Origin: Mytilus edulis
Lineage: Eukaryota
DNA length: 64,000 nucleotides
Direction of reading: 5' to 3'
Assembly (NCBI RefSeq): GCF_963676685.1
Contig: NC_092346.1
Coordinates: 99,448,001-99,512,000, forward strand
The notes beneath the pieces are model-generated. The model searched no databases, was not told the origin of the DNA, and worked only from the letters and a program-made list of their open reading frames with translations. Positions 20,065 through 59,254 of the stretch are shown here, one piece after another. Within the stretch, counting starts at the first letter, position 1; every line of letters starts with the position of its first letter. The position numbers and the translations under genes were made by a program.

Positions 20065-23000
20065 TTATCCTAATAGAAAGGCGCCCAATGCACCTAACAG
20101 TAAACCTTTTACGGCGCCTTTCTTTTTCTCTTTTTGTTGTTTCTTCTTACCCTCATACTTAGAGTTTAAATTACGTTTCTTCTCTCGAATTAATTTTCGT
20201 AATCTTCGATTTTCCCTTTTAATGTCTTGTAATGGGTTTCTGCCAGCTCCTACAATTGGTAAGGTATCATGTTTTATATGCATATCCTGTAATCGTCCGT
20301 TTAGCCTTGTGTTTATTTGGAGTTCTCTTTCAATAGGGTCAAATCCACTGTTAGGTGTATGCAACGAACCAACTGGTATGGCACCCGGAAAGTTATTTCT
20401 CATTGGTCCAGGTATGAAAGGACTTCCGTTGTCCATAAACGGTAAATCACCACGTCCACCTTCTAGTCTAGGTGGTGAGAGGTTTCTATCGAACGATAAA
20501 ACGCCAGGACCTGGACCTAAACGTGACTGACTAACACCAAAGCGTGAACTAAATGGTGATTCAGGTCCACCAGGTATTGTATCTGGGTTGAAAGGTGTTT
20601 GTGGTCCACCTTGTACAAAACCTGGACCTAAACGAGATTGACCAACACCAAAGCGCGAACTAAATGGTGAGTCTGGTTCACCAGGTATTCTATCTGGACT
20701 GAAAGGTGTTTGTTGTCCACCTTGTACAAAACCTGAACTAAAAGGCGTCTCAGACCTTCCGTTTACTCCAGTGAATGGAAATCTGCCTTGTTGTAGCCCA
20801 AATCCAGGTTGAGCGTTTTTGAAATTGTTTGTTTGTGGTAAGTTATTTGGTAAAGCTGTATTGGGTATACCTGTGATAGTACCGTCAGCAGATCCAATAG
20901 GATTTGTGGGCAATAGCTGATCTCGAGTAAAGGAACCAAATCGTTGGCTGAATCCGTCTGGAGAATTAAAGTTCTGTAGCTGTGACGTTGATCCCATGGT
21001 TTGAAGTACTTGTTGCGCCACTTGATTAAAAAGTTGTTGTCCCTGCTGTTCGTTTAACCCTAGAGGTTGAGCATTGATGATGTTCGCTACACGTTGCCCT
21101 TGTAGGTTTTGGTTGCTTTGGCCTGCACCCCATCTTCCAAAAGGATTTGTCAACCCAGGCCTAAACTGGCAATTAATTTCTGTAATAAGAAAATAAAATA
21201 TATAAACTTTTTTGGAAAAATAAACCTTCAATGTGGTGAGGAGGGTTAAACCAGTTGTTTGTTTAAGTCTTTGCCCTTTATTCCCTTATCACTAATTCTT
21301 TGAGTAAAGGTAAACGTTTATACTGTTGCTTTGTAGATTACACTAGAGCTTTTGATAGTGTCACACATTACAAATTATGGCAAAGATTAGTCAGATGTGG
21401 AGTAACTGGTAGACTTTTAAATGTATAGCAAATTAAAAACTTGTGTAAAACTTAATGGAAAATTTTCTGATTTTTTTGCATGTACTGTTGGTCTAATGCA
21501 AGGGGAATCCTTATCTCCTCTGTTGTACTCATTATATGTCAATGATATGGAGATAGAACTTATTACACAAAACTGTAAATCATATGAACTTAAAATGTTA
21601 AATCTGTACTTGTTAATGTACGCTGACGATATGGTTTTATTTAGTGAAAGTATTACTGATCTACAAAAGATGATCGATGATGTAAATGTTTATTCAAATA
21701 AGTATGATTTGTACATAAATTTGTCAAAAACCAAAATTGTAGTTTTTAATAACAGAGGGAAAATTAGACCAGAAGAGCAATGGTATATAAATGGAAAGGC
21801 TATTGATATATGTAACGAGTTTATGTATTTGGGAATTTTATTTTATTATACTGGTAAATTGCAAATACTCAAAAGAAACTATCAGAACAGGGTAAAAAGG
21901 CTGTGTTTAGTATATTCAATAAAATACATGATGATTATTATAATCCTGAAACTTTGTTGTCATTATTTGAAACTTATGTAGCAAGTATACTGAATTATTG
22001 CTCGGAAATATGGGGATTTCATATGGCACCTAATATCGAAAATGTTCATTTGTATTTTTTAAAACGTGTTCTTAAAGTCAAAATGAGTGCTGTAACTAAT
22101 ATGATTTATTGTGAATTAGGTAGATTGCCAATGTACATTGAAAGGCAGTATAGAATGGTCAAATACTGGTTAAAAATTTTGAGTACAGAAAATTGTATAT
22201 TAAAGAATTGCTATGATGAGATGTATGACAGAAGTTTTATTAAAAAGAAAGATAAACAAAACTGGTGTTGTAAAATTAGAGATATTTTGTTTAGATATGG
22301 ATTTAATTATGTTTGGTAAACCAAAGTGTAGTTTGTAAAGACATTTTTCTATCGCAATTAAAAAAAAGAATGCTTGGTGTATTCATTAGTGAAGTAACTG
22401 TTTTTTGAGAATTCAAATAAATGTCATTTATATAGATACATGAATAGTACACACACATTGCAATTTTATTTAGATAGACCTGTAAATTATATATACAAAC
22501 CATACATTTGTAAATATCGTATATCAGCTCATATATTAAGTATAGAAACAGGTAGATATTATAATGTTGATAAAAATAATAGACTATGTACAAATTGTAA
22601 TACTAGCTCTATTGAAGATGAATACCATTTTATACTTGAATGTAAAAAATATAGTCAAATTCGAGAAAAGTATATAAAAAAGTATTATTGGAGAAATCCT
22701 TCTACATACAAACTTATCCAGTTGTTATCTGTCAGAAATATTAAAGAATTGAATAACTTAGGTATATTTTTAAAATCTGCAGAAAAACTTAGAATTTAAT
22801 TGCAGTAAATAATATTTTTGTTCTAAGTTAAGTGTTATATCATTATATCATTCTCCGCTCGTATTTCGTATTTTGTATTATGTATTATGTATTATACGTT
22901 CTTTCATGCACACCTTATATTTATATATATTATATGTCTCTTGTAAAATTCTTATATTGGTGTAAAATTGTGTATATGTATCCTATAAGCTGTATTGCTT

Positions 23001-23599
23001 TCGGAATAAAGTATTATTATTATATAAGTTATCATGTCGTTAAACTAAAACACAATGAAACCTGCACAGCGCAGCTACCAAAAGAATGCTTATTTGTGGA
23101 ACAAGGAAATAAAATACGCACATAATTTGGAAAGCAAGATCAAAGTTGCCCACTCACACTGCATTTTTGTTATCTAATATTAAGTACTGGAAAGTAGCAT
23201 GTACGGCGGTTTTTGTTTTTAAATTTGATACTGGCGGAAATATTCAATTGGGGTCAACTGTTAAAGTTTGTTTTCATCTGTATGAGATACTACAAAATCA
23301 ACTTATGTTGACAATTCTATCATTCTTTTTGCCAACAATTAAGATCGTCACATGTCAGGCTAGGGCACTTGTATAGGTTGCTATATGCGGTATGGGTTTT
23401 GCTCAATATTGGAAGCCATACGGTGATCTTTAGTTGTCGAACTTAATTTGATCTATGATGATGGGATGTCTCATCGATAATCATACTTCATTTATTTTAT
23501 ATCGGTAGGTAAAACTTACCGTGAAAGTTATGATAACATCTAATAGTACCTACCAGAAACTAACAGGAATAGGAGTAGCAATCCTTTGGGTACTAACAT
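20065..23599 (-). CDS. Uncharacterised secreted Gly/Pro/Gln/Phe-rich protein (~386 aa) with basic helical C-terminal domain and hydrophobic tail (gene A)
   Basis: Coding exons 23599-23554 (MLVPKGLLLLFLLVS+G, donor gtaggt) and 21179-20065 (acceptor ttcttattacag, phase 1). The join gives signal-peptide-like MLVPKGLLLLFLLVSEINC|QFRPG. The 1115-nt exon is open. Candidate polyA signal (plus-strand tttatt) at ~19312. Confidence 0.85.
20510..20735 (-). repeat. 111-bp (37-aa) tandem coding repeat x2 in gene A
   Basis: GFVQGGQQTPFSPDRIPGEPDSPFSSRFGVGQSRLGP / GFVQGGPQTPFNPDTIPGGPESPFSSRFGVSQSRLGP. Confidence 0.9.
21270..23013 (+). mobile_element. 5'-truncated, frameshifted non-LTR retrotransposon (LINE) in intron 2 of gene A
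   Basis: RT motifs YCCFVDYTRAFDSV, GLMQGESLSPLLY and YADD. C-terminal ETGR...RLCTNC...EDEYHFILEC zinc-binding-like motif. Split across ORFs 21421, 21903 and 22440. AATAAA followed by a (TAT)n tail at ~23006. Confidence 0.9.
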
Positions 23600-23834
23600 A
23601 GTCCGGCTGCAAAGTTAATAACATTATTATTATCATCGCAGTCAATAGAATCTATTATTATTGTCGCAGACATTTCCTTCGTATTCAATATGATTTTAAA
23701 GAAGATAACTGATTAAATGCCAATGTAGTAACGGTATTTTCATATTTTGCGACAGATGTAGTATGCCTGCTGGCACGACCGTGTTATTATTAGTTGCTGA
23801 CGACGCTCTGAAATGTAGACATTTACGGATTTAA

Positions 23835-24451
23835 GGGCATACGATACAGTTTTGATCCTGTATTTACAGTTTGATGAAAATTTCCATATAGGCTATTTTT
23901 TGTCTGATTAAATCAAATATGTAATAAAAAATATACCTCCATGTGCTACTTTTTGAGTTAAATGAGGTCGAAATTATGTATATTTGCTCAAAATTTGGAT
24001 TTGTGGCCGTATTTTTCCTTTCGAAAGAAAGACATAACTTTTATGTTTTAAAAGATAAACCCAAATTGTTTTTTGTTAAATAATTTGTGATTTCTGTATT
24101 TTATAAGTGTCCTAAAAATTTACGCATTTTTTTTTCAGAAATAACTCAAATTTATCAAATGGTCATGAATTGAGAAAAAACGTCATTTTTTCTGTATATT
24201 TATCAAGATTAAAAAAGTTGCACTATTTACAGTTTTATAAAAATTGGTCCACATAATCTCCCTGGAAAATGAAACAAAATGTCGTTTTAAAAAATAGGGG
24301 TCCATGCACTTGTTTTCCAATTAAATCAGTTTGAATGATAAAAATCAGTCGAAAAATGCATCTTTTCCCGATATGTCACAGTTTGACGTCGCGAAAATAA
24401 CATTTTACGTTAGCAACGTCATTACCTCCCCTGTAACTGTATCGTATGCCC
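23835..24451. mobile_element. MITE with TTAA target-site duplication (Kolobok-like termini)
   Basis: ttaa|GGGCATACGATACAGTT ... AACTGTATCGTATGCCC|ttaa. Confidence 0.85.
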
Positions 24452-25003
24452 TTAATTAAAATTGACTGTATAATTCTGTTTCCAAGTGCTTTTGTTAAAA
24501 AAATATATGCAGGCCGTACGGTTGCTTAAATTCCGTATACACAGCATTTCAACTTTGGTGGGTAGTTGTCGTATTGGCAATCATTACACATCTCCTTATT
24601 TTTAAATGTATGTTATTTTCGAAGGATAGACTCATAACATTGACATGTACTTCGTATTCACATTCTGATCATATCATTTGATTTCTACTAATACGCATGT
24701 ATCTCTGTGTCATTTGTTCTCTTGTAGAGAGTTGTCTTGTATGCAATCATACATGTATCTTCTAATTTTTATATCAAAACTTATCTGTAATTTTAAATGT
24801 ATTTTCAAATTCGGTGTTAGTGTATGTATATCTTTACATGCTACTAGAAATAATGTTGCCTTTGTATGATTTTGTCATGGATTTATTGATGATGATCAAT
24901 ACCGTTTTAAATTACATAGAACGTATGATCGCGATTTAATCTTTTATTTGTTGAAGCGAATGATCGCACGGTATTTGGAAATGAACGAGTCATAAGAACT
25001 TAC

Positions 25004-25087
25004 TGTATAGTAGAATAGAGTCCTTTTCTATTGTATGTTTGTTATCATCAGTATTTCAATTGTATGTTCGGTATGATCAGTATATAA
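25004..25087 (-). promoter_or_regulatory. Putative TATA box and non-coding first exon of gene A
   Basis: TATATA at 25081-25086 and donor aca|gtaagt at 25003. An acceptor tttgcag at 23607 sits 7 nt upstream of the ATG. The exon resembles gene B exon 1. Confidence 0.5.
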
Positions 25088-25847
25088 GCATACCGATGAC
25101 CATTGTATTTTATCATTTGTCACCTAACCTGTCAAGTCTTAATTGACAAATATGTCAGACAAGATTAACTGACGTATGTAGTATTGACGTATGCTTGTAA
25201 CTTGCACATTAAATGGATAACTAGCTATATATATGTTTACATTTAATGCCGCCGGTCATACTGGGGGGAAATATATATATATATGGTACTGAAAAGTTTT
25301 ATTCAACAGATTTTAGAAGATACTAAGAATATAACATTACCCGGAATATGTAACACGGTTTATACGAGACTATACGTGTATACGCTTTTCATATGTCTCC
25401 CCTAATCAAAAATGCACATGAGATTCTGTTGACTTTACTGAGATGAATAACTTGTCAACATTATACTTTTTGTGTTAAGCACCGTAATATTCCCTGCGGC
25501 TTGCCACCAAACAGAATTTAATGATATTTCTAATGAAGTTTTCAGAACCTGGGGAATTGGATGTATCTTTGTATTCAATTGTATGTACTCAAGTACCATT
25601 GCGACAACATTCCAGAAAAGACTGAAGGACAATATGTTTATTTTTCTATATATAATGGCATCAAACATCTCAAAAATGTCAAATATAAAGCGTTTTTATT
25701 CCATTTTTACGTTTTTAATTGTGTAAAAAGTTTAATTATAAATTGTCTGTGTCTGTGTGTTTACAGTAGGGACTTTTTCATTAGTCTATTTTGTGCAAGT
25801 TCAAATCTGAACTTGTCTATATGTTAACACTTTGTTAAAAGCTTTTT

Positions 25848-28800
25848 TCAATGATTTCGTCGTATAGTTTTTTTAAGGGAAGCATTGTCTTTTCGTATTT
25901 CTTTCAGTGTTTTATTCTTCTTGATCTTTTGTTGTTGCTTCGCTTTATTAATTTGCCTCTTTAATAATACATTTGCCTTTCGTATTTCTTTCATAAGTTT
26001 TCTCTTTGAACCTTGAATGACTATGGAATCTTTCTCATTTTGAATGTCATAAAGCATTTTATTTAATCGGTCATTCTCAATTAATCCTTTTCCGATTTTA
26101 TGCTTACGCATTTCCAAAGATTCGCCGTGAACGACTAAAGTGTCGCCGCCATATTGAATATCATTCAATAATTTTGTTAATCGTTCATTCTCTGCTAAAC
26201 CTTTTCCTATGTTAGAAGAGTACTTATCTACAAAAGTAACAGGACCATTTATATTTGGATTAGGAACATTCAACTGAGTGTGTAGCTTTCTATTGTCTGC
26301 TAGTGCTAATCCAATCGGATGACTTTGGTCAATAACAAATGAAGATGGAACATAATTTTGCAGCTGAAGACTTGATTGTTGGATACTAATTGTATTTGTG
26401 TTATCTAATATGATCGGGATTTGTTGGTTTTTCTGTCGTTTTGCTTGAGCAATCTGTTTCCTAACCATGGCATTTTCCTGTTTTATCTGCTTCTTGGTCA
26501 TTGCTTTTGTTTTCCTCCTTTGAGTTTTGGATCTTACGATTTCTTTTTTTAGTGCAGTGTTGGATTTTCGTAGTTCTTTAATTGCCTTTCTCTTTGAACC
26601 TTGAACAAATAAGGAATCGTTATTAGTGTGGATATCATCAAGACGTTTACTGAGCCTACCATTTTTAGATAAGGCCTTTCCTATTGCATGATTGTTTATA
26701 TCTAATACCTCTCCATGGACCATTAATGTATCTCCGCCATTTTGTATATCACTTAGAGCTTTTGCTAGGCGTTCATTCTTTGCAAGTTTTTTTCCTATTT
26801 TAGATTTGTGTTTATGAACAAATGAGCCTACTCCGTTAACGTTATGGATTCCATTATCAAGTCCGTGTAGAGTTGTTCTTAAATGCTGGTTTTCTGCTAT
26901 AGCTGCGTCAATTTGATTCTTTTTCTGTATCACAGAAACATTTGGTAAAGCAAATCTCTTAACACGTTGTCCGTAACTATTCCATGCACCTAACGTCGAA
27001 CTATGTGGTCTGGCATGGACATTATTATTTGATGATCCTGCATATACTCCCCCTGGTATCACATTTGGTATTATTTGTTGTGATGTAAATCCTGAAGCAA
27101 ATCTTGATGTTACTGCAGGCACAGTAGAGTCATAATTGTCATGAATGTTCACCCTTTCTGCCGTTCGTTCAATATTATAGACGCTAGGAGTTTTCTGAAC
27201 TTGAGAAGTATGGAGAGGCCGAATAACTTGGTGTCTTGTTATTAATGATGGACGATTTACATTGTTGTAATTATTATTTCCATGTCCATTTACGGCTACA
27301 AAATAACAAAAAATAATATAAAACTTTTTAAAACTGAAGTTATTAAAACAAATAGTAGTAAGTAAAGTAACATATATAGAGATGTGATGTGATGTTCAAT
27401 GGTAGTCGTTTGTTGATGTAGTTCATATAAACTGTCTTTCGTTTCTCATTTTGTGTATAGATTATATCGTTGGTTTTCCCGTTTAAATCGTCTTACACTA
27501 GTAATTGTTGGTGTTGGGCCCTTTATAGCTTGCTGTTCGGTGTGAGCCATGGTTTCGTGTTGAAGACCGTACTTTGACCTATAATGGTTTACTTTTACAA
27601 ATTGTGACTTGGAAGGAAAGTTGTCTCACTGGCACTCATACCACTTCTTCTTCTATCTATATGTATTTTGTTTTTGTTACATTTATCACCACAGTTTCAT
27701 TTTTGTGTTTTTTCCTCTATCTTGAATTTATTGCACAATTCTTGTAAGTATGCATTTTTTTTTTCATTAAGAAGAGATGAGCTGTGCGTATTTACTGATA
27801 TTATTTAAATATTAATATTGAATGGTGTATCCCTTATCTCGGAAAAGGAGGCAAATATAAAGTTTTGTTACTCTGAGGTTGTATCCGACACAGTCAAGTG
27901 ACAATTAGTTCATAATTATTCAACAAGAATGAATTATCATTTGGTATAAATTGCACAAAACATGTCGGTGGAGAAGAGAGGACAATTTTTTAAAGAAACT
28001 AGAAAATGAAGATCTGATCTAAAAAGGACGGAAATCTAGCAGCTCAATAGGCCAATTTTAACAAATTCCTCAGATATATGTTGCAATGGTGTTATATAAT
28101 GAGGAGAGTGCGACACACTCGTCCTATATACACTGGGCATCAGATGTTATGTCAAAGATGGTATGGGAATTTCGCTTTATTCTGAATAAATTTTGATATT
28201 TGATCACAGAAAGGGTGTATTCCGTTTTAAACGTGAAAGGAAACAGCATTTTAATATAGTTGTTTTTATATTGTACTGGTATAGCTCTTTTAAGGGGACG
28301 AAATTGAATATACACTGTTGCTTTTTTTTTTTTAACTTTCGGTTGGATATAAGCATCATGACATGGGTACTTATTAAAAGTAAAATCCGTTTGAATATAT
28401 ATAAATGTTTATGAAAATCAAAGTAAAATGAAAACAAAAGCAAAAACGAAAGAAATAAGCAGTCCATGACCATAGTAAGATAAGAAAATTAAATAACATT
28501 TTGGTTTTGATATTTTAATTTCACAAATTGATCGATCGTTTTAGTTTTATTAACATGAATGTCCACACTTGACATATTATAATTATTTACCACTTTTATA
28601 GCTTTAAAAATGTGCCGTCAATAGTTTTTTCAAGCCAACAATCTAAAGGACGGTAATTAACTGTTTAATTCTATGATAATGGGATGGGCCATACTTATGA
28701 TGATTTTCTAAGAAGAAATTTTATACAAGAAAATATTCAATGGTTTGAAAAAACGGACTTTGTTTGTTATTATAAATTGTTGTAAACAAAATTATGAATT

Positions 28801-28920
28801 ATATTGAGAATATAGAAGAATATGCTATAACATATGAATAAAAGATTTCTAAAAACGTATATAATACTTACATGAAAATGTCAAATAAAGAAAAGCTATA
28901 AGTTGAACCGTAATAAACAT
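25848..28920 (-). CDS. Uncharacterised secreted Lys/Asn-rich basic protein (~498 aa) with internally duplicated helical-repeat domain (gene B)
   Basis: Coding exons 28920-28872 (MFITVQLIAFLYLTFS+T, donor gtaagt) and 27295-25848 (acceptor ttattttgtag, phase 1). The join gives signal-peptide-like MFITVQLIAFLYLTFSSVNG|HGNNN. The frame is open for 1448 nt. Contains an RVKR site and no Cys. Confidence 0.85.
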
Positions 28921-29488
28921 ATCTTTATAATATTCTGAAAAATGAAATAATAATAAACGTTATTATAAAAAGAAGATGTGGTATGATTGCCAATGAGACA
29001 ACTCTCCAGAACAGATCAAATGATACAGAAATTAACAACTATAGGTCACCGTACGGCCTTCAACAATGAGCAAAGCACATACCGAGCCCATATCGCATAG
29101 TCCGCTATAAAAGGCCCGGAAATGACAACGCAAAACAATTTAAACGAGAAAACTAACGGCTTAATTCATGTACAAAAAATGAACGAAGAACAAATATGTA
29201 ACTGACTAACACATAAACAAACGACAACCACTGAATAACATGCAAACAGTTCATTTGTGAACGAGTAGTCCCCCTTTCGAGGTAAGTTTAGAACCACTGA
29301 TTTGTGAATAAAGGTGAAAACTATATAATATTAAGTTAAAGCCATATTTTATATATTATACGAACTAAGGTTACTAAGTCTTTCACCATATTATAAAAAT
29401 CATAACTAAATAGCGGAGAGTTTGATCTTCCTGAAGTAAAGTGTTATTGTATTATAGTGTTTCTTTAACTCTCGTTTTAACACCTTAC

Positions 29489-29550
29489 CTTTCAGAATAG
29501 TTTCCTTTTACTAAGTGTGTTTTCTAATAAATCAAACATTTTATTTATAT
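29489..29550 (-). promoter_or_regulatory. TATA box and short non-coding first exon of gene B
   Basis: Minus strand TATAAATA at 29549-29542 and strong donor gaaag|gtaagg at 29488. Matching acceptor ttcatttttcag at 28935, 14 nt before the ATG. Confidence 0.6.
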
Positions 29551-31864
29551 GACCATGCTGTCAGATTAACAAATTGACCTCTGTTTTAGGCGACCGGACA
29601 TGAAGTGACGTATTGATTTTGCAACATAATTTGTTAAGCTTTGACAAGTCTTACAACATATTATATATTCTTGTCGAACGGGTACATAATACGACACGAC
29701 TATGTGATTCACTGAACAGAACGGGAAAATTTCTTGGATACTAATCCAACACAAAATATTAATCTTCTTCCGTCCCAGAACACCGTGCCCAGAATACTAG
29801 TTTTAGCGTTAGACCGATGACCTGCTACTTATTCGCTTACAATATGCTTGTTATAGGTCGCACCTTTTTTGTTCTTGTCTCTGATGCTATATTGGTTCTA
29901 AGAGATAAAATAACCCTATTCTAAGGCGTAAATACTCGTTTCAGTGATCGACTGATGCCCTGTTACTTATTCGTTCCATATTCTCTTACTATACGTGTGA
30001 TATTCGGTGCACCTTTTTAAAACAATATCTTTTCAATTGTATTCATTCAGTATTTTTTTTTCTGTAGATTACTCATCTTCAAACGAAATGAGCGTTATCA
30101 GTAATTTTTTTCTGACAATTTTTTTTTAATTACTTATGACGTGTTAATCAAATATAATATTAATAAATGCAGAAGCATATAATTATCTAATGAACCAAAT
30201 ATTTCCTTATTCAATTTTTTACGATTTTTTGTCAACGAAATAGTTAGGCTGATTATTTTAGATATGCAATGTATACTAAATGTAAACGCACAAGTTCGTT
30301 TAAAAAGATCGAAAACGCGAGATGCTCTTCAGAGATCGATTTTATTTCAATTCCGTGCAAGTGTTAACGGGGTCTAATTAACACCATTTCTGTTTTTATC
30401 ACTCATCCTTAGGCATCTATGAATATCGAAATATTCCGTAATGTTGCTAGAAACTCAGTCTAAGTATACTCGTATGAGGTTGAATAAAACCTAGTCCGAC
30501 CTTTTTTTCTCAAATCTCCTTTTAATTATTTTTTTCCCATATGCATTCCTCTGTAATTCTTCATTCCGACATCTTTTTAACACAGACACGATTATGTTTT
30601 TTTAAACAAAAAATGCACACCTTATACATAAATATCAAACAATCGGGACAAACTCGGAATGGTCATATAAAAAAACCTACAATGTTAGAAGATTATATGT
30701 TAACTTCTCTAGATGTACTTTGTTTTACATGTATGCGTCATTAGGTTACTGTTTTGTTGGTGTTTATTTGAAATCTAATTATCATATTCATGTAAAAATG
30801 TAAGTGCAGTACACATTCAAAATACGTCAGTGCAATTTGCCATATCCATACCTATTGCTAAAGATACAGTGAATTTTGAGTACATGATCAGAAAGATTGA
30901 TGATTTTCGTACTTTCTTAATGATTTGTAAAATATCGATGTAATTAAGAACCTACAAAAGTCTATACATGTAGAAAATTAAGGAAAAAAGTATTATATTA
31001 CAATTTGATTGGCTCATCTTGTTGTCGAGTATCCAGATTCTATTTCGTTTCTTTACGGCCATTTTTGTGTGTTTTTTGTTGTTAGATTGCTGTATAGTGG
31101 ACTCTCTTTTCATTCTCATATTTTATCCAATTCTGGAACATGTCTATTATTTAAAAACAATTTTCATTTTTTTCTCGTCAAATTAACCTATCAAAACGAT
31201 TGTCACTCTCTCCATCGGCTCAAAGAGGAATAACTCTAATAAACGTTTCCAGTTCGCGGAAACCGCGACGTCATAAACCACTAACGGCATAGTACTGTTG
31301 CGCTTGTAATTGCGCATAAACAATAGAGGGATTTGTCTTTAATTAAATGACCTGTGTGCCATCACGGCATCTGGAGAACAGCAATCCATATACGATATAC
31401 CAATACAGAAGAATAATCACCTTATAATATATTTTTAATTAATCAAATATTACTAGTACCAGGGAGCAATGTCCTTTGTTAGAACTTGGTATGAAAATTT
31501 CTCATGGTAGTTGTCAACCTAAATGTAATAATAAAATGGATGATCTCATGATTTCCCTATTCTGATGTTAATTTTACTTTTATTTTTCCAGAAAAAAATT
31601 ATATATTACCTTTTTTGCAAAGTAAAAAGGTCCCTCCTTTCAAACAATAGAAACATAATTGACTTGTACATGCAGTGCCCCAACCTGACCACTCTGCTGG
31701 GGTTAGTGATAAGTTCTTACAGTAACTTTCCAAGGAACGGCTTCACCTTCCATTGACACCCTTTATGACACAGGAGGGCGTAGAAAAAAACCCGCCAAAA
31801 TGACTTTCTTTGAATTCATATGATCTTTGTATCTGTGGTCAGCTTCGTTATTATGTTTAGTAGC

Positions 31865-57000: not shown

Positions 57001-59254
57001 CTAAACATGTTACTTTAACCTTGATTACTGATCCATGAAATGAGGTCTGACGGACATTTAGACCTTGTAATTTGTAACATAAAACTCAAGGATAACTGAC
57101 ATAACACAGATAGAAACATTGTCATCTGAAAACAAAGTATAAAGCCTACAGGTCTTCCACCCAATGAAATAAAAAGCTTAATACAAGTAGTTTATGGCAC
57201 AGCCATTGGATAGTAAATTCCCATGTCTGACATTCTGTGACTTTCACCACAGATGAGACAATCAATACGACAATAGGAATTATTAATCATTCCTTTGTGA
57301 CTTTAATATTTACATGTCAGCAGATGAAAACAGGAATCAATCTTTGAATGGTATCACGGTCAACTACTGTTCCATTTGGAAATGAGGTAACTTCCAAGAA
57401 TTTATAAATAAACAAAACCAATACCATGTCTGAACCTTCATTGCTTTCTGGACCTTGATTCATGACACATGTACAAAATATATACTAAAGCAGAACTGAT
57501 CATTCCCTTAAAACATGGATAACAAGAAACTTTTATTTTCCTATGTACAAATAGTGTTATCAGATTTCATACTACATTGTATCAACAAACTGGAATGGCT
57601 GCACAACAGATTTGAAAATTGCTTATTGAAAAAAGGTAACTAGTAACTAGGAATCAAACAATATTTTTACAGAAAAAGCTAATACACTTCACTCCAATTT
57701 TCAGACTTACTTAAAAAAGTGTTTTTTTAAACTTCATATTTTTTAGTGATGTTTTTGTGCAAAGGTGTATACTATCTTACCTGTAAATGAAACATGAGGT
57801 GTAATAAGTTGTATTATAACAAGCTCTGCCCAGAAAGCTATCTTGCTTGGTACAGGTATAAAACCTAAGATGTACTGAGTTCCTGCTGGACTATAGTGAC
57901 TCACTAACACCTTCAATGCAAATATCACACCTACAATTTAACAGAAGGCTTTGAATAAGTATCATAAGTAAATGTCCAAAGAAAATCTGTATATAAGAAA
58001 TTGCAAGCCCTATCTCTCACCAAGAAATATTTGCCTCCCCCTTCTTAGTTAGAATATAATTATGCTGACTCTAGCTGAATTGGGTCGTGTTGCTGAAATC
58101 CCGATCCTAAATGGTCCCTTTGGTGCTGAGTTCAATATGATTCATAGGAGATACATCAAAGGAATCGAGGGATTCCAAGAAAGTTGAAATCTAGGGAAAA
58201 TGTGAATGTTTTTCGTTGAGAAGTTAATGTGAAAACTGGATGTCAAACTGTGCGAGTTAGATTGAGTAAAAATATCAATTAGAATTTTTTTTTTTAATCC
58301 TAATAGTTTACCGGTAAGGGTCTGCCATATTCAGAGCTGAAGAATAAAACATATACTACAATGAACTAGATTTTTGTAAACCCTGACGTCTGTTTCTGTT
58401 AAGAAATATAGTATAAAAAAGAAGATGTGGTATGATTGCCAATGAGACAACTGTCCACAAGAGACCAAAATGACATAGACATTAACAACTATAGGTCACC
58501 GTACGGCCTTCAACAATGAGCAAAGCCCATATCGCATAGTCAGCTATAAAAGGCCCCGATTAGACAATGTAAAACAATGCAAAAGAGAGGTTTGATTATC
58601 TCTTATAATTTGCAAGATATATTTTTTTTTAAATTCCAATATATAAAGGTTAAATGAAATAAATTGCTAATGAGTTGGTGTGTTGAGTAACTTAAAAAAT
58701 CAAATGCTTTAATGTAATTTAGATGCTAATTATTATTTATATGTTTTCTGACCACATAGCTATTGATCATTTCAATATTTTATCATAAAGTTACCTGAAA
58801 ATCCCACTGCACATACAAGATCATACGATGAATCATCAAGTACTCTCTCCAGAGCTATGTTAAGTCCAAGATAAGTCAGACTAGTTAATACTGTAAATAC
58901 TGATAGTAAGTACAAAAAATATACACTTTTAAATTTACGCTCCAGTACTCTCCCTTTGTAAAGGAATGATGCCATGTTGTAATATAAATGAATGTCATTG
59001 GAATGGTACAATGCAGCTAATATCAACCTTCGCCATTCTTTACGATATAAAACATGATATACACTAAGACAAACTTTGCCTGCGTTGGGGAACCATTTCA
59101 TCAGATCACCAAATTGTAAAAAGATAGCTGATTGTAATACAACTGCTGCCAGTGTCACGGGAGGAATGTTATCTACACCAATGTTCATCATCTGTGCTCC
59201 AAGGAGTAAGACACCAAGTCCTCTCCCGCCAGATCTTCCTCCAAGATAAGGCAT
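54029..59254 (-). CDS. RHBDD1: Rhomboid-related protein 4 (RHBDL4), intramembrane serine protease, ~315 aa
   Basis: Exons 59254-58795, 57930-57781, 56479-56399, 56009-55956, 54974-54840 and 54096-54029, all joined by phase-1 introns. Motifs: IPPVTLA, WR, HLYYNM, catalytic GFSG, GHLAG, UIM-like AGLSEEEQVQRAREES, C-terminal p97-binding-like LRQRRQDRF. Confidence 0.93.

What the first reader, a model, noticed from the sequence alone, without database searches (positions are those of the whole stretch)
20065..29550. Tandem pair of orphan secreted proteins sharing an unrecognised helical repeat domain
Genes A and B look unrelated in composition (A is G/P/Q/F low-complexity, B is K/N-rich), yet they share an ungapped ~55-aa module. 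A: DPIERELQINTRLNGRLQDMHIKHDTLPIVGAGRNPLQDIKRENRRLRKLIREKK. B copy 1: HAIGKALSKNGRLSKRLDDIHTNNDSLFVQGSKRKAIKELRKSNTALKKEIVRSK. B copy 2: HKIGKGLIENDRLNKMLYDIQNEKDSIVIQGSKRKLMKEIRKANVLLKRQINKAK. Consensus: I-x3-L-x2-N-x-R-L-x3-L-x-D-[IM]-x4-D-[ST]-[LI]-x3-G-x2-R-x5-[IL]-[KR]-[KR]-x-N-x2-L-[KR]-[KR]-x-I. Both genes have signal peptides, the same orientation and the same exon layout (seen in sequence). I do not recognise the family. Inference: a lineage-specific, co-expressed pair of extracellular structural proteins (shell matrix, periostracum, byssus or egg coat) that may co-assemble through this module.
Basis: partly seen in the sequence, partly recalled or inferred. Interest (0 to 1): 0.85.

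Follow-up and report, generated by a model that had tools for sequence, protein, structure and literature searches.

The report
Mussel-only secreted paralogue pair, new module

Summary
The window is Mytilus edulis. Gene A (386 aa) and gene B (498 aa) lie in tandem on the minus strand. Both have three exons, with a signal-peptide exon that ends in a phase-1 intron.

**Shared module.** It is far above chance:
- BLASTP gives E 2e-7.
- The Smith-Waterman score of 100 compares with 37-47 ± 6 for shuffles.
- hhalign gives 95 % probability and E 3.5e-8.
- A B-family profile finds only A elsewhere in the 1.37-Gb genome. In 1.84 billion proteins it finds only B-like proteins and one A-like protein.

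**Architecture.** The module is one ~37-aa unit (a helix with a conserved Asn in its hydrophobic seam, then a strand) followed by a polybasic helix.
- B carries six such units in two duplicated halves, after a conserved RxKR site.
- A carries one unit, a conserved Gln-rich N-domain, fast-changing G/P/Q/F repeats and an invariant C-terminal Gly-zipper tail.

**Known relatives.** No Pfam family, PDB sequence or specific fold matches. Both genes are already in public annotation as "uncharacterized protein", and they are adjacent in four Mytilus species.

**Not tested.** Co-expression, tissue and co-assembly could not be tested. The structural-matrix reading is plausible but unproven.

The parts
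20065..21179 (-). Gene A exon 3 (phase-1 acceptor to stop): residues 16/17-386
   Evidence: Acceptor ttattacag at 21180; translation of 20068-21177 is identical to P0006 residues 17-386
20896..21093 (-). A: conserved Gln-rich N-domain (aa 45-110), ending in the motif NFxSPxGFSQRFGSFxxDQLLP, which is also seen in B
   Evidence: 65-78 % identical even in distant A-like proteins; motif versus B by hhalign gives E 2.9e-4, probability 41 %
20341..20895 (-). A: fast-evolving G/P/Q/F low-complexity region; includes a 111-bp (37-aa) tandem repeat at 20509-20742
   Evidence: TRF finds 2.1 copies, 89 % matches; 22-34 % identity and many gaps in distant homologues, and the repeat number differs between Mytilus species; AF2 pLDDT is below 50
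20170..20340 (-). A: the shared module (aa 296-352): helix, strand, polybasic helix
   Evidence: AF2 helices at 297-320 and 331-385
20068..20118 (-). A: C-terminal hydrophobic Gly-zipper tail GAVKGLLLGALGAFLLG, which ends the protein
   Evidence: G374, G378, G381 and G386 are invariant in all 7 A-family sequences; hydropathy peak
23554..23599 (-). Gene A exon 2 coding part: MLVPKGLLLLFLLVS plus 1 base, donor GTAGGT
25004..25050 (-). Gene A putative non-coding exon 1 (the 5' limit is a guess), donor GTAAGT at 25003
   Evidence: Sequence inspection; 16-nt block AAAAGGACTCTATTCT resembles the end of B exon 1. Weak
25848..27295 (-). Gene B exon 3 (phase-1 acceptor to stop): residues 17/18-498
   Evidence: Acceptor ttttgtag at 27296; translation of 25851-27293 is identical to P0015 (XP_071165641.1) residues 18-498
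26955..26966 (-). B: RVKR (aa 127-130), a candidate proprotein-convertase site before the repeat domain
   Evidence: K129 and R130 are invariant; RVKR, KKR and RMKR occur across B-family members; the only RxK/RR site in B
26415..26924 (-).
   Evidence: Halves align with SW 378; units shown; AF2 pLDDT 63-91 for aa 171-310
25851..26324 (-).
   Evidence: this is the best-conserved part of B (54-58 % in distant homologues)
28872..28920 (-). Gene B exon 2 coding part: MFITVQLIAFLYLTFS plus 1 base, donor GTAAGT
29489..29549 (-). Gene B putative TATA box (TATAAAT at 29549) and non-coding exon 1, donor GTAAGG at 29488
   Evidence: Sequence inspection. Not verified with transcripts

Best explanation
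A and B are diverged tandem duplicates of one ancestral gene that is restricted to mussels (Mytilidae as far as can be seen). Both encode proteins that enter the secretory pathway, have no cysteine once the signal peptide is removed, and are strongly basic (pI 10.4-10.9). The shared element is a new sequence module. It consists of a ~20-residue amphipathic helix (h-x3-hh-x-N-x2-h-x2-hh-x2-h) whose conserved Asn sits in the hydrophobic seam, then a short strand (D-[ST]-[LI]-x-[VI]-x-G), then a polybasic helix that carries a second N-x2-L motif. B is a pro-protein. It has a ~110-aa disordered N-region that ends at a conserved RxKR site, followed by two duplicated halves. In each half three units pack into a small helical bundle capped by their strands, and a 50-57-residue basic helix follows. 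A keeps one unit and one basic helix. It adds a conserved Gln-rich N-domain, an expandable G/P/Q/F elastomer-like repeat region, and an invariant C-terminal Gly-zipper hydrophobic tail. The inferred mechanism is as follows. Both proteins are exported. The basic helices bind polyanions such as acidic or sulphated glycans, acidic matrix proteins or membranes. The helix units mediate self-association or A-B association. A's tail anchors it in a membrane or in a hydrophobic assembly. On this reading they are components of a mussel-specific extracellular or secretory-granule material. Shown: the gene models, the paralogy, the restricted distribution, the repeat hierarchy and the predicted secondary structure. 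Inferred: secretion, cleavage, binding partners, tissue and role.
For: Gene models match the public proteins exon by exon. Open frames of 481 and 370 codons in 32 % GC DNA are kept intact in four Mytilus species and in more distant homologues at 40-50 % identity. Paralogy. A B-family profile hits only B and the A module in the 1.37-Gb genome (E 1e-3). In 1.84 billion proteins it hits only B-like proteins and the A-like P0013 (E 5.8e-5). There is a collinear second shared motif, and the exon layout and intron phase are identical. A and B lie on the same contig with consecutive accession numbers in M. edulis, M. galloprovincialis, M. trossulus and M. californianus. Architecture. Charge, absence of Cys and low Tyr. 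Lineage-restricted secreted proteins with rapidly changing repetitive low-complexity domains are a documented feature of mollusc secretomes (PMC5400390).
Against: The signal peptides were judged by eye only. A's polybasic stretch lies on the N-terminal (exoplasmic) side of the hydrophobic tail, which is unusual for a stop-transfer anchor, and the tail of 17 aa is short for a transmembrane helix or a GPI signal. The AF2 models rest on only 6-7 sequences; mean pLDDT is 59 for B and 44 for A. The A-B complex prediction gave no verdict.
Confidence: 0.5

Rival explanations
1. A is a cell-surface protein held in the membrane by its C-terminal Gly-zipper helix (or by a lipid anchor that replaces it), and B is its soluble secreted paralogue. 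On this reading they form a membrane-plus-ligand or scaffold pair rather than a bulk structural material.
For: The GxxxGxxGxxxxG tail at the very C-terminus is invariant in all A-family members, while B has none. The tail is the only hydrophobic segment besides the signal peptide. AF2 makes it the end of a continuous helix, 331-385.
Against: The tail is only 17 residues and contains a Lys in Mytilus. There is no cytoplasmic residue after it, the basic cluster is on the wrong side for the positive-inside rule, and there is no spacer for a canonical GPI signal (sequence inspection). No binding evidence (one search gave no verdict).
Confidence: 0.2
2. The pair are host-defence or membrane-active proteins: cationic amphipathic helices released by convertase cleavage. 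A's Gly-ended hydrophobic C-terminal peptide would be released and possibly amidated.
For: Net charge is +48 (B) and +17 (A), and the mature parts have no Cys. B has a conserved RxKR site. A has an invariant terminal Gly preceded by KKK. Mussels are rich in lineage-specific antimicrobial peptide families (general knowledge).
Against: The proteins are far larger than known mussel antimicrobial peptides and have folded bundle domains. The basic helices are only weakly amphipathic and are rich in Q/K/R. No similarity to any antimicrobial peptide family was found in Pfam. The Foldseek rows for alpha-pore-forming toxins have E 0.2-2.5 and TM below 0.2, so they are not significant.
Confidence: 0.12
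3. The A-B similarity is a by-product of similar K/R/N-rich coiled-coil composition, that is convergence and not common descent.
For: The matched region is compositionally biased, and identity is only 29 %.
Against: Composition-preserving shuffles, including shuffles restricted to the biased segment and block shuffles, never approach the score (z 8-12). BLASTP with composition adjustment gives E 2e-7. hhalign gives 95 %. The profile finds the A family and nothing else in 1.84 billion proteins. The alignment is ungapped and keeps non-compositional positions (I, N-x-R-L, D-[IM], D-[ST]-[LI], G). Exon phase and the second collinear motif are also shared.
Confidence: 0.03
4. The open frames are annotation artefacts or decaying pseudogenes with no function.
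Against: Long intact frames are conserved across species at 76-94 % identity within Mytilus and 40-50 % beyond. Conservation is uneven along the proteins: the module, tail and N-domain are far better conserved than the low-complexity region. Canonical splice sites and phases are present.
Confidence: 0.03

Closest known systems
Lineage-restricted mollusc secretome proteins with repetitive low-complexity domains (RLCD proteins; Aguilera et al. 2017, PMC5400390)
   Same: Signal peptide, restriction to one lineage, a rapidly expanding and contracting low-complexity repeat (A's 37-aa G/P/Q/F repeat), tandem gene arrangement, and no recognisable domains.
   Different: That class is defined by mantle expression, which was not tested here. 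B is not low-complexity: it has a hierarchically duplicated, predicted-folded helix-strand repeat. The A/B module is not among described shell-matrix or byssal motifs as far as my searches reach.
Generic three-helix bundles and spectrin/plakin-like repeats
   Same: AF2 packs the three helices of each B half into an antiparallel bundle followed by a long helix. The best structural rows are such bundles (8p4y Z 8.5; plectin, desmoplakin and spectrin Z 5.4-5.7).
   Different: The Z values are within the range the tool itself calls non-specific for helical models. There is no sequence similarity, the B units add short strands, and the conserved Asn lies in the seam.
Pfam DUF6671 (PF20376)
   Same: All six B-family proteins give their most consistent Pfam hit here, always to profile positions ~57-148 and in either half.
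   Different: Scores of 13-21.3 bits are below the 23.8-bit cut-off. The six proteins are homologues, so the hits are not independent. The family did not match the B locus in a whole-genome search. No literature was found. Treated as not related.
SNARE-type tail-anchored coiled-coil proteins
   Same: A's C-terminus reads coiled-coil helix, then polybasic linker, then a hydrophobic segment that ends the protein.
   Different: A has an N-terminal signal-peptide-like segment, which tail-anchored proteins lack. No SNARE or synaptobrevin Pfam match. The tail is 17 aa and Gly-rich. The resemblance is in layout only.
Mussel foot and byssal proteins (mfp, TMP)
   Same: Secreted, very basic, repeat-containing and mussel-specific.
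   Different: The Tyr/DOPA-rich composition that defines them is absent (Tyr 0.3 % and 1.9 %). No sequence match.

Membership tests
Any Pfam-A family | Score at or above the family's gathering cut-off | tested here: not met
   the best hits were Carb_kinase 21.1 bits (cut-off 27) and DUF6671 21.3 bits (cut-off 23.8); for A, only Mso1_C at 14.8 bits (cut-off 20.5)
DUF6671 (PF20376) | At least 23.8 bits against the profile | tested here: not met
   13-21.3 bits in six homologues; no hit at the B locus in the whole-genome search
Mollusc RLCD secretome proteins | N-terminal signal peptide | tested here: inconclusive
   Hydrophobic cores of 9-14 residues with small residues at -1/-3 (MLVPKGLLLLFLLVSEINC|Q; MFITVQLIAFLYLTFSSVNG|H), judged by eye and by hydropathy; no dedicated predictor was available
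Mollusc RLCD secretome proteins | Lineage restriction | tested here: met
   The only named hits are from four Mytilus species; the few unnamed contigs carry the same architecture
Mollusc RLCD secretome proteins | Repetitive low-complexity domain that changes copy number | tested here: met
   111-bp repeat in 2.1 copies in A; M. edulis A has one 37-aa copy more than the other three Mytilus species
Mollusc RLCD secretome proteins | Expression in the mantle, or presence in the shell matrix | not testable with these tools
Mussel foot proteins (DOPA adhesives) | High Tyr content (about 10 mol % or more; from general knowledge of mfps) | tested here: not met
   Tyr is 0.3 % in A and 1.9 % in B
Tail-anchored / SNARE proteins | No signal peptide; a SNARE motif; a transmembrane segment at the extreme C-terminus | tested here: not met
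   A signal-peptide-like N-terminus is present and there is no SNARE Pfam hit; only the terminal hydrophobic segment is met
GPI-anchored proteins | Small omega/omega+2 residues, a polar spacer, then a hydrophobic tail (about 20-30 aa in all) | tested here: inconclusive
   Only 17-18 residues follow the basic cluster and there is no spacer; no GPI predictor was available
Spectrin-like three-helix repeats | A specific structural match well above background | tested here: inconclusive
   Best Z is 8.5, and plakin/spectrin rows are at Z 5.4-5.7, inside the tool's stated non-specific range for helical models; Foldseek found nothing at E <= 0.001

The most novel reading that the evidence does not exclude
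The ~37-aa 'helix with a core Asn plus strand' unit defines a new extracellular protein domain that arose within mussels. A (with its hydrophobic tail and elastomer-like region) and B (soluble, with a double bundle) would form a dedicated two-component assembly, anchor plus cross-linker, in a mussel-specific material or secretory granule, with the core Asn layers setting the register or oligomer state of the assembly.
Probability: 0.15. Interest if true: 0.6.

Novelty: new variant of a known kind. Interest (0 to 1): 0.35.

Why it matters
Mussels make several unusual extracellular materials, and much of their secretome consists of lineage-specific proteins with no annotation. This pair is a clean case. 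It is a two-gene family with clear paralogy, a defined repeat hierarchy, a conserved processing site and a conserved terminal hydrophobic tail. That gives concrete handles for experiments: antibodies, in situ probes and recombinant modules. If it proves to be a component of byssus, periostracum, shell or a secretory granule, it would add a new building block. It would also give an example of how a small helix-strand unit was multiplied six-fold in one paralogue and replaced by disordered repeats in the other. As it stands it is an uncharacterised but already catalogued gene pair, of moderate interest mainly to mollusc biologists.

Tried and rejected
**Family, sequence and fold searches**
- Pfam on both exons and on all B homologues found only sub-threshold hits. 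DUF6671 was followed up and dropped.
- PDB sequence profiles found nothing.
- Foldseek against the PDB found nothing at E <= 0.001.
- VIA wide search gave only generic helical bundles, Z <= 8.5.
- ESM Atlas gave no usable hit for either protein.

**Homologue and paralogue searches**
- The third homologue search, with an A-family profile, found no new members.
- The JGI metagenome scan with the B profile found 596 pattern matches, none confirmed.
- A tblastn of A and B against the window found no further paralogue. The own-genome search also found none.

**Complex prediction**
- Complex prediction with B 341-498 and A 290-369 scored 0.24 and 0.02 against a mark of 0.34. The verdict was "no answer", so it is evidence neither for nor against binding.

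I did not resend it, so read laying was not used and there is no expression evidence.

**Literature**
- Full-text searches for all accession numbers and LOC ids found 0 papers.
- A search by UniProt accession prefix found 13 papers. I checked two Mytilus papers for supplements: the one file held for the first did not contain the accessions, and none is held as text for the second.

**Other**
- Promoter comparison of A and B gave only short collinear 7-16-nt blocks, which is not significant.
- I made no joined (spliced) sequence of my own. Searches used exon references and the public protein ids returned by the tools.

Full report
**What is in the sequence**

The window is AT-rich animal DNA at about 32 % GC. 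Protein searches identify it as Mytilus edulis. The two long minus-strand open frames, at 20065-21231 and 25848-27152, are the last exons of two genes annotated as "uncharacterized protein": XP_071165640.1 (386 aa) and XP_071165641.1 (498 aa).

Reading the minus strand and locating the pieces gives identical layouts.
- **Gene B:** ATG at 28920; 16 codons of signal-peptide-like sequence (MFITVQLIAFLYLTFS) plus one base; donor GTAAGT; acceptor at 27296; exon 3 at 27295-25848.
- **Gene A:** ATG at 23599; 15 codons (MLVPKGLLLLFLLVS) plus one base; donor GTAGGT; acceptor at 21180; exon 3 at 21179-20065.

Both coding exons 2 begin just after an acceptor site, so each gene should also have a non-coding exon 1. 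Candidates end at 29489 (B) and 25004 (A), by inspection only. The exon translations equal the public proteins residue for residue. I did not build a joined sequence. All searches used exon references or the protein ids that the tools returned.

**Is the shared module real?**

Yes.
- BLASTP with composition adjustment gives E 2e-7 over 71 residues.
- The Smith-Waterman score is 100. Shuffling all of A gives 36.9 ± 5.3. Shuffling only A's K/R-rich C-terminus gives 39.7 ± 5.7. Shuffling B in 20-residue blocks gives 46.6 ± 6.5. None of 500 shuffles reached 100 in the two sets that were counted, and the highest whole-A shuffle was 62.
- Profile-profile comparison of the two family alignments gives 95 % probability, E 3.5e-8, 63 columns.
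- Independently, a B-family profile searched over the whole 1.37-Gb genome finds only B itself and the A module (E 1e-3).
- The same profile, searched exhaustively against 1.84 billion representative proteins, finds five proteins. Four are B-like and one (P0013) is an A-like protein from a more distant species (E 5.8e-5).

The refutation criterion "not significant against composition-shuffled controls" is therefore not met.

**More than a shared module**

- **Paralogy beyond the module.** A second, collinear motif lies about 200 residues upstream of the module in both families: NFxSP-GFSQRFGS-FxxDQLLP in A and N[YF]DSxxxAV[ST]SRFxSGFxSxQ[LI][LI]P in B. hhalign gives E 2.9e-4 and probability 41 %, which is suggestive only. 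With the identical exon structure and intron phase, this indicates duplication of the whole gene rather than a shuffled domain. No DNA-level similarity remains between the two loci apart from interspersed repeats, and both types occur in the distant homologues, so the duplication is old.
It is about 37 aa: x-I-G-K-x-L-x-x-N-x-R-L-x-x-x-L-x-D-I-x4-D-[ST]-[LI]-x-[VI]-x-G. It is followed by one or two basic helices of the type K-x-[IL]-K-[ED]-I-[RK]-K-x-N-x2-L-[KR]-[KR]-x-I.
- **B's hierarchy.** B has three units plus two basic helices in each of two halves, which align with SW 378.
- **A's single copy.** A has one unit and one basic helix.
- **The conserved Asn.** In every helix it falls at the seventh position of a 0/4/7/10-11/14/17 hydrophobic pattern, that is in the seam. 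The position is my inference from the pattern.

**Predicted structure**

AlphaFold2 on the six-sequence B alignment gives mean pLDDT 59. The two halves reach about 61-92 (aa 171-310 and 371-498), while aa 1-170 and the linker are below 50. Each half reads helix, strand, helix, hairpin, helix, strand and then a 50-57-residue helix.
- Foldseek finds no PDB match at E <= 0.001.
- The exhaustive VIA search gives only generic bundles, best Z 8.5 (a designed coiled-coil), with spectrin and plakin repeats at Z 5.4-5.7. The tool itself describes this range as non-specific for helical models.

A is predicted disordered (mean pLDDT 44) except for helices at 297-320 and 331-385. The second helix runs into the hydrophobic tail.

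**Family features**

B family:
- A basic pair is invariant at aa 129-130. It appears as RVKR, KKR or RMKR just before the first unit, a proprotein-convertase-type site and the only RxK/RR site in B.
- The second half is the best-conserved part, at 54-58 % identity in distant homologues.

A family:
- The Gln-rich N-domain (aa 45-110) is the best-conserved part, at 65-78 % identity.
- The G/P/Q/F region is the worst, at 22-34 % identity with many gaps. It contains a 111-bp tandem repeat, and M. edulis has one more copy than the other Mytilus species.
- RENRRLRKLIRQKK is almost invariant.
- The protein always ends in G-L-x-L-G-A-L-G-A-x3-G.

The predicted mature proteins:

| Protein | Size | pI | Cys | Tyr |
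|---|---|---|---|---|
| A | 39.8 kDa | 10.9 | none | 0.3 % |
| B | 53.8 kDa | 10.4 | none | 1.9 % |

(Values.)

**Distribution**

Named hits come only from M. edulis, M. galloprovincialis, M. trossulus and M. californianus. In each species A and B are on the same contig with consecutive accession or LOC numbers, so the tandem arrangement is conserved. The adjacency is inferred from the numbering and the shared contig length. More distant members, at 40-50 % identity, come from unnamed Logan, ENA and JGI contigs. That they are other mytilids is my guess. No other paralogue exists in the window or the genome.

**What it most likely is**

It is a Mytilidae-restricted, tandemly duplicated pair of secreted, polycationic proteins. 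B is a processed protein with a double bundle. A combines a conserved N-domain, an elastomer-like disordered repeat, one module and a terminal hydrophobic Gly-zipper.

Such lineage-restricted secreted proteins with quickly changing low-complexity repeats are common in mollusc secretomes (PMC5400390). My confidence is about 0.85 that the two are real, secreted paralogues. The low Tyr content argues against classical DOPA adhesives.

Alternatives that remain open:
- A as a membrane-anchored partner of soluble B.
- A host-defence role for the cationic helices.

**What could not be tested**

- **Expression, co-expression and splice confirmation.** I did not resend any part of it.
- **Co-assembly.** One complex prediction, B 341-498 with A 290-369, scored 0.24 and 0.02 against a mark of 0.34. 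That is no verdict and is not evidence either way.
- **Literature and proteomes.** No paper in the library cites any of the accessions. Of two Mytilus papers checked for supplements, the one file held for the first lacked them and none is held as text for the second.

**Verdict**

The genes are already catalogued as uncharacterised proteins, whereas the module and the A-B relationship appear undescribed. Interest is moderate.

Noticed in passing
window 21300-22800 (+), inside intron 2 of gene A: A 5'-truncated reverse-transcriptase fragment lies on the opposite strand. The ORF at 21421-21978 matches the C-terminal half of Pfam RVT_1 (E 4.4e-18, profile positions 103-203 of 205), and further broken frames follow it. 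It looks like a dead non-LTR retroelement insertion and is not part of the genes.
   Followed up: partly
window ~23390-23500 and ~24545-24775 (gene A locus) versus ~28950-29085 (gene B intron 1): Interspersed repeat copies of ~70-117 bp at 72-77 % identity, in inverted orientation, occur in non-coding parts of both genes (blastn). They are probably a common mussel MITE- or SINE-like element. They are the only DNA similarity between the two loci.
   Followed up: no
window 25025-25083: A 29-bp tandem duplication (2.0 copies, 86 % matches) overlaps the putative exon 1 of gene A and the sequence just upstream. Its effect is unknown.
   Followed up: no
window 24995-25215 (-) versus 29480-29640 (-): The putative promoter and exon-1 regions of A and B share short collinear blocks: GTTAATCT..TGACA, GTCAATT, ATGGTCAT, and AAAAGGA-CTATTCT just before the donor. 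Each block alone is not significant. They may be a remnant of the duplication or a shared control element.
   Followed up: partly
window 58772-59254 (-): An exon encoding a rhomboid domain (Pfam PF01694, E 6.6e-11). It is an unrelated neighbouring gene.
   Followed up: partly
B-family proteins P0001-P0005 and P0032: All six give weak but consistent sub-threshold hits to Pfam DUF6671 (13-21 bits against a cut-off of 23.8), always to profile positions ~57-148. Three members in the alignment scan (P0003, P0005, P0032), plus the fragment P0059, also hit the same stretch of Carb_kinase. This is probably a pattern coincidence of I-G-K-G-L...D-x-L-V-x-G.
   Followed up: partly
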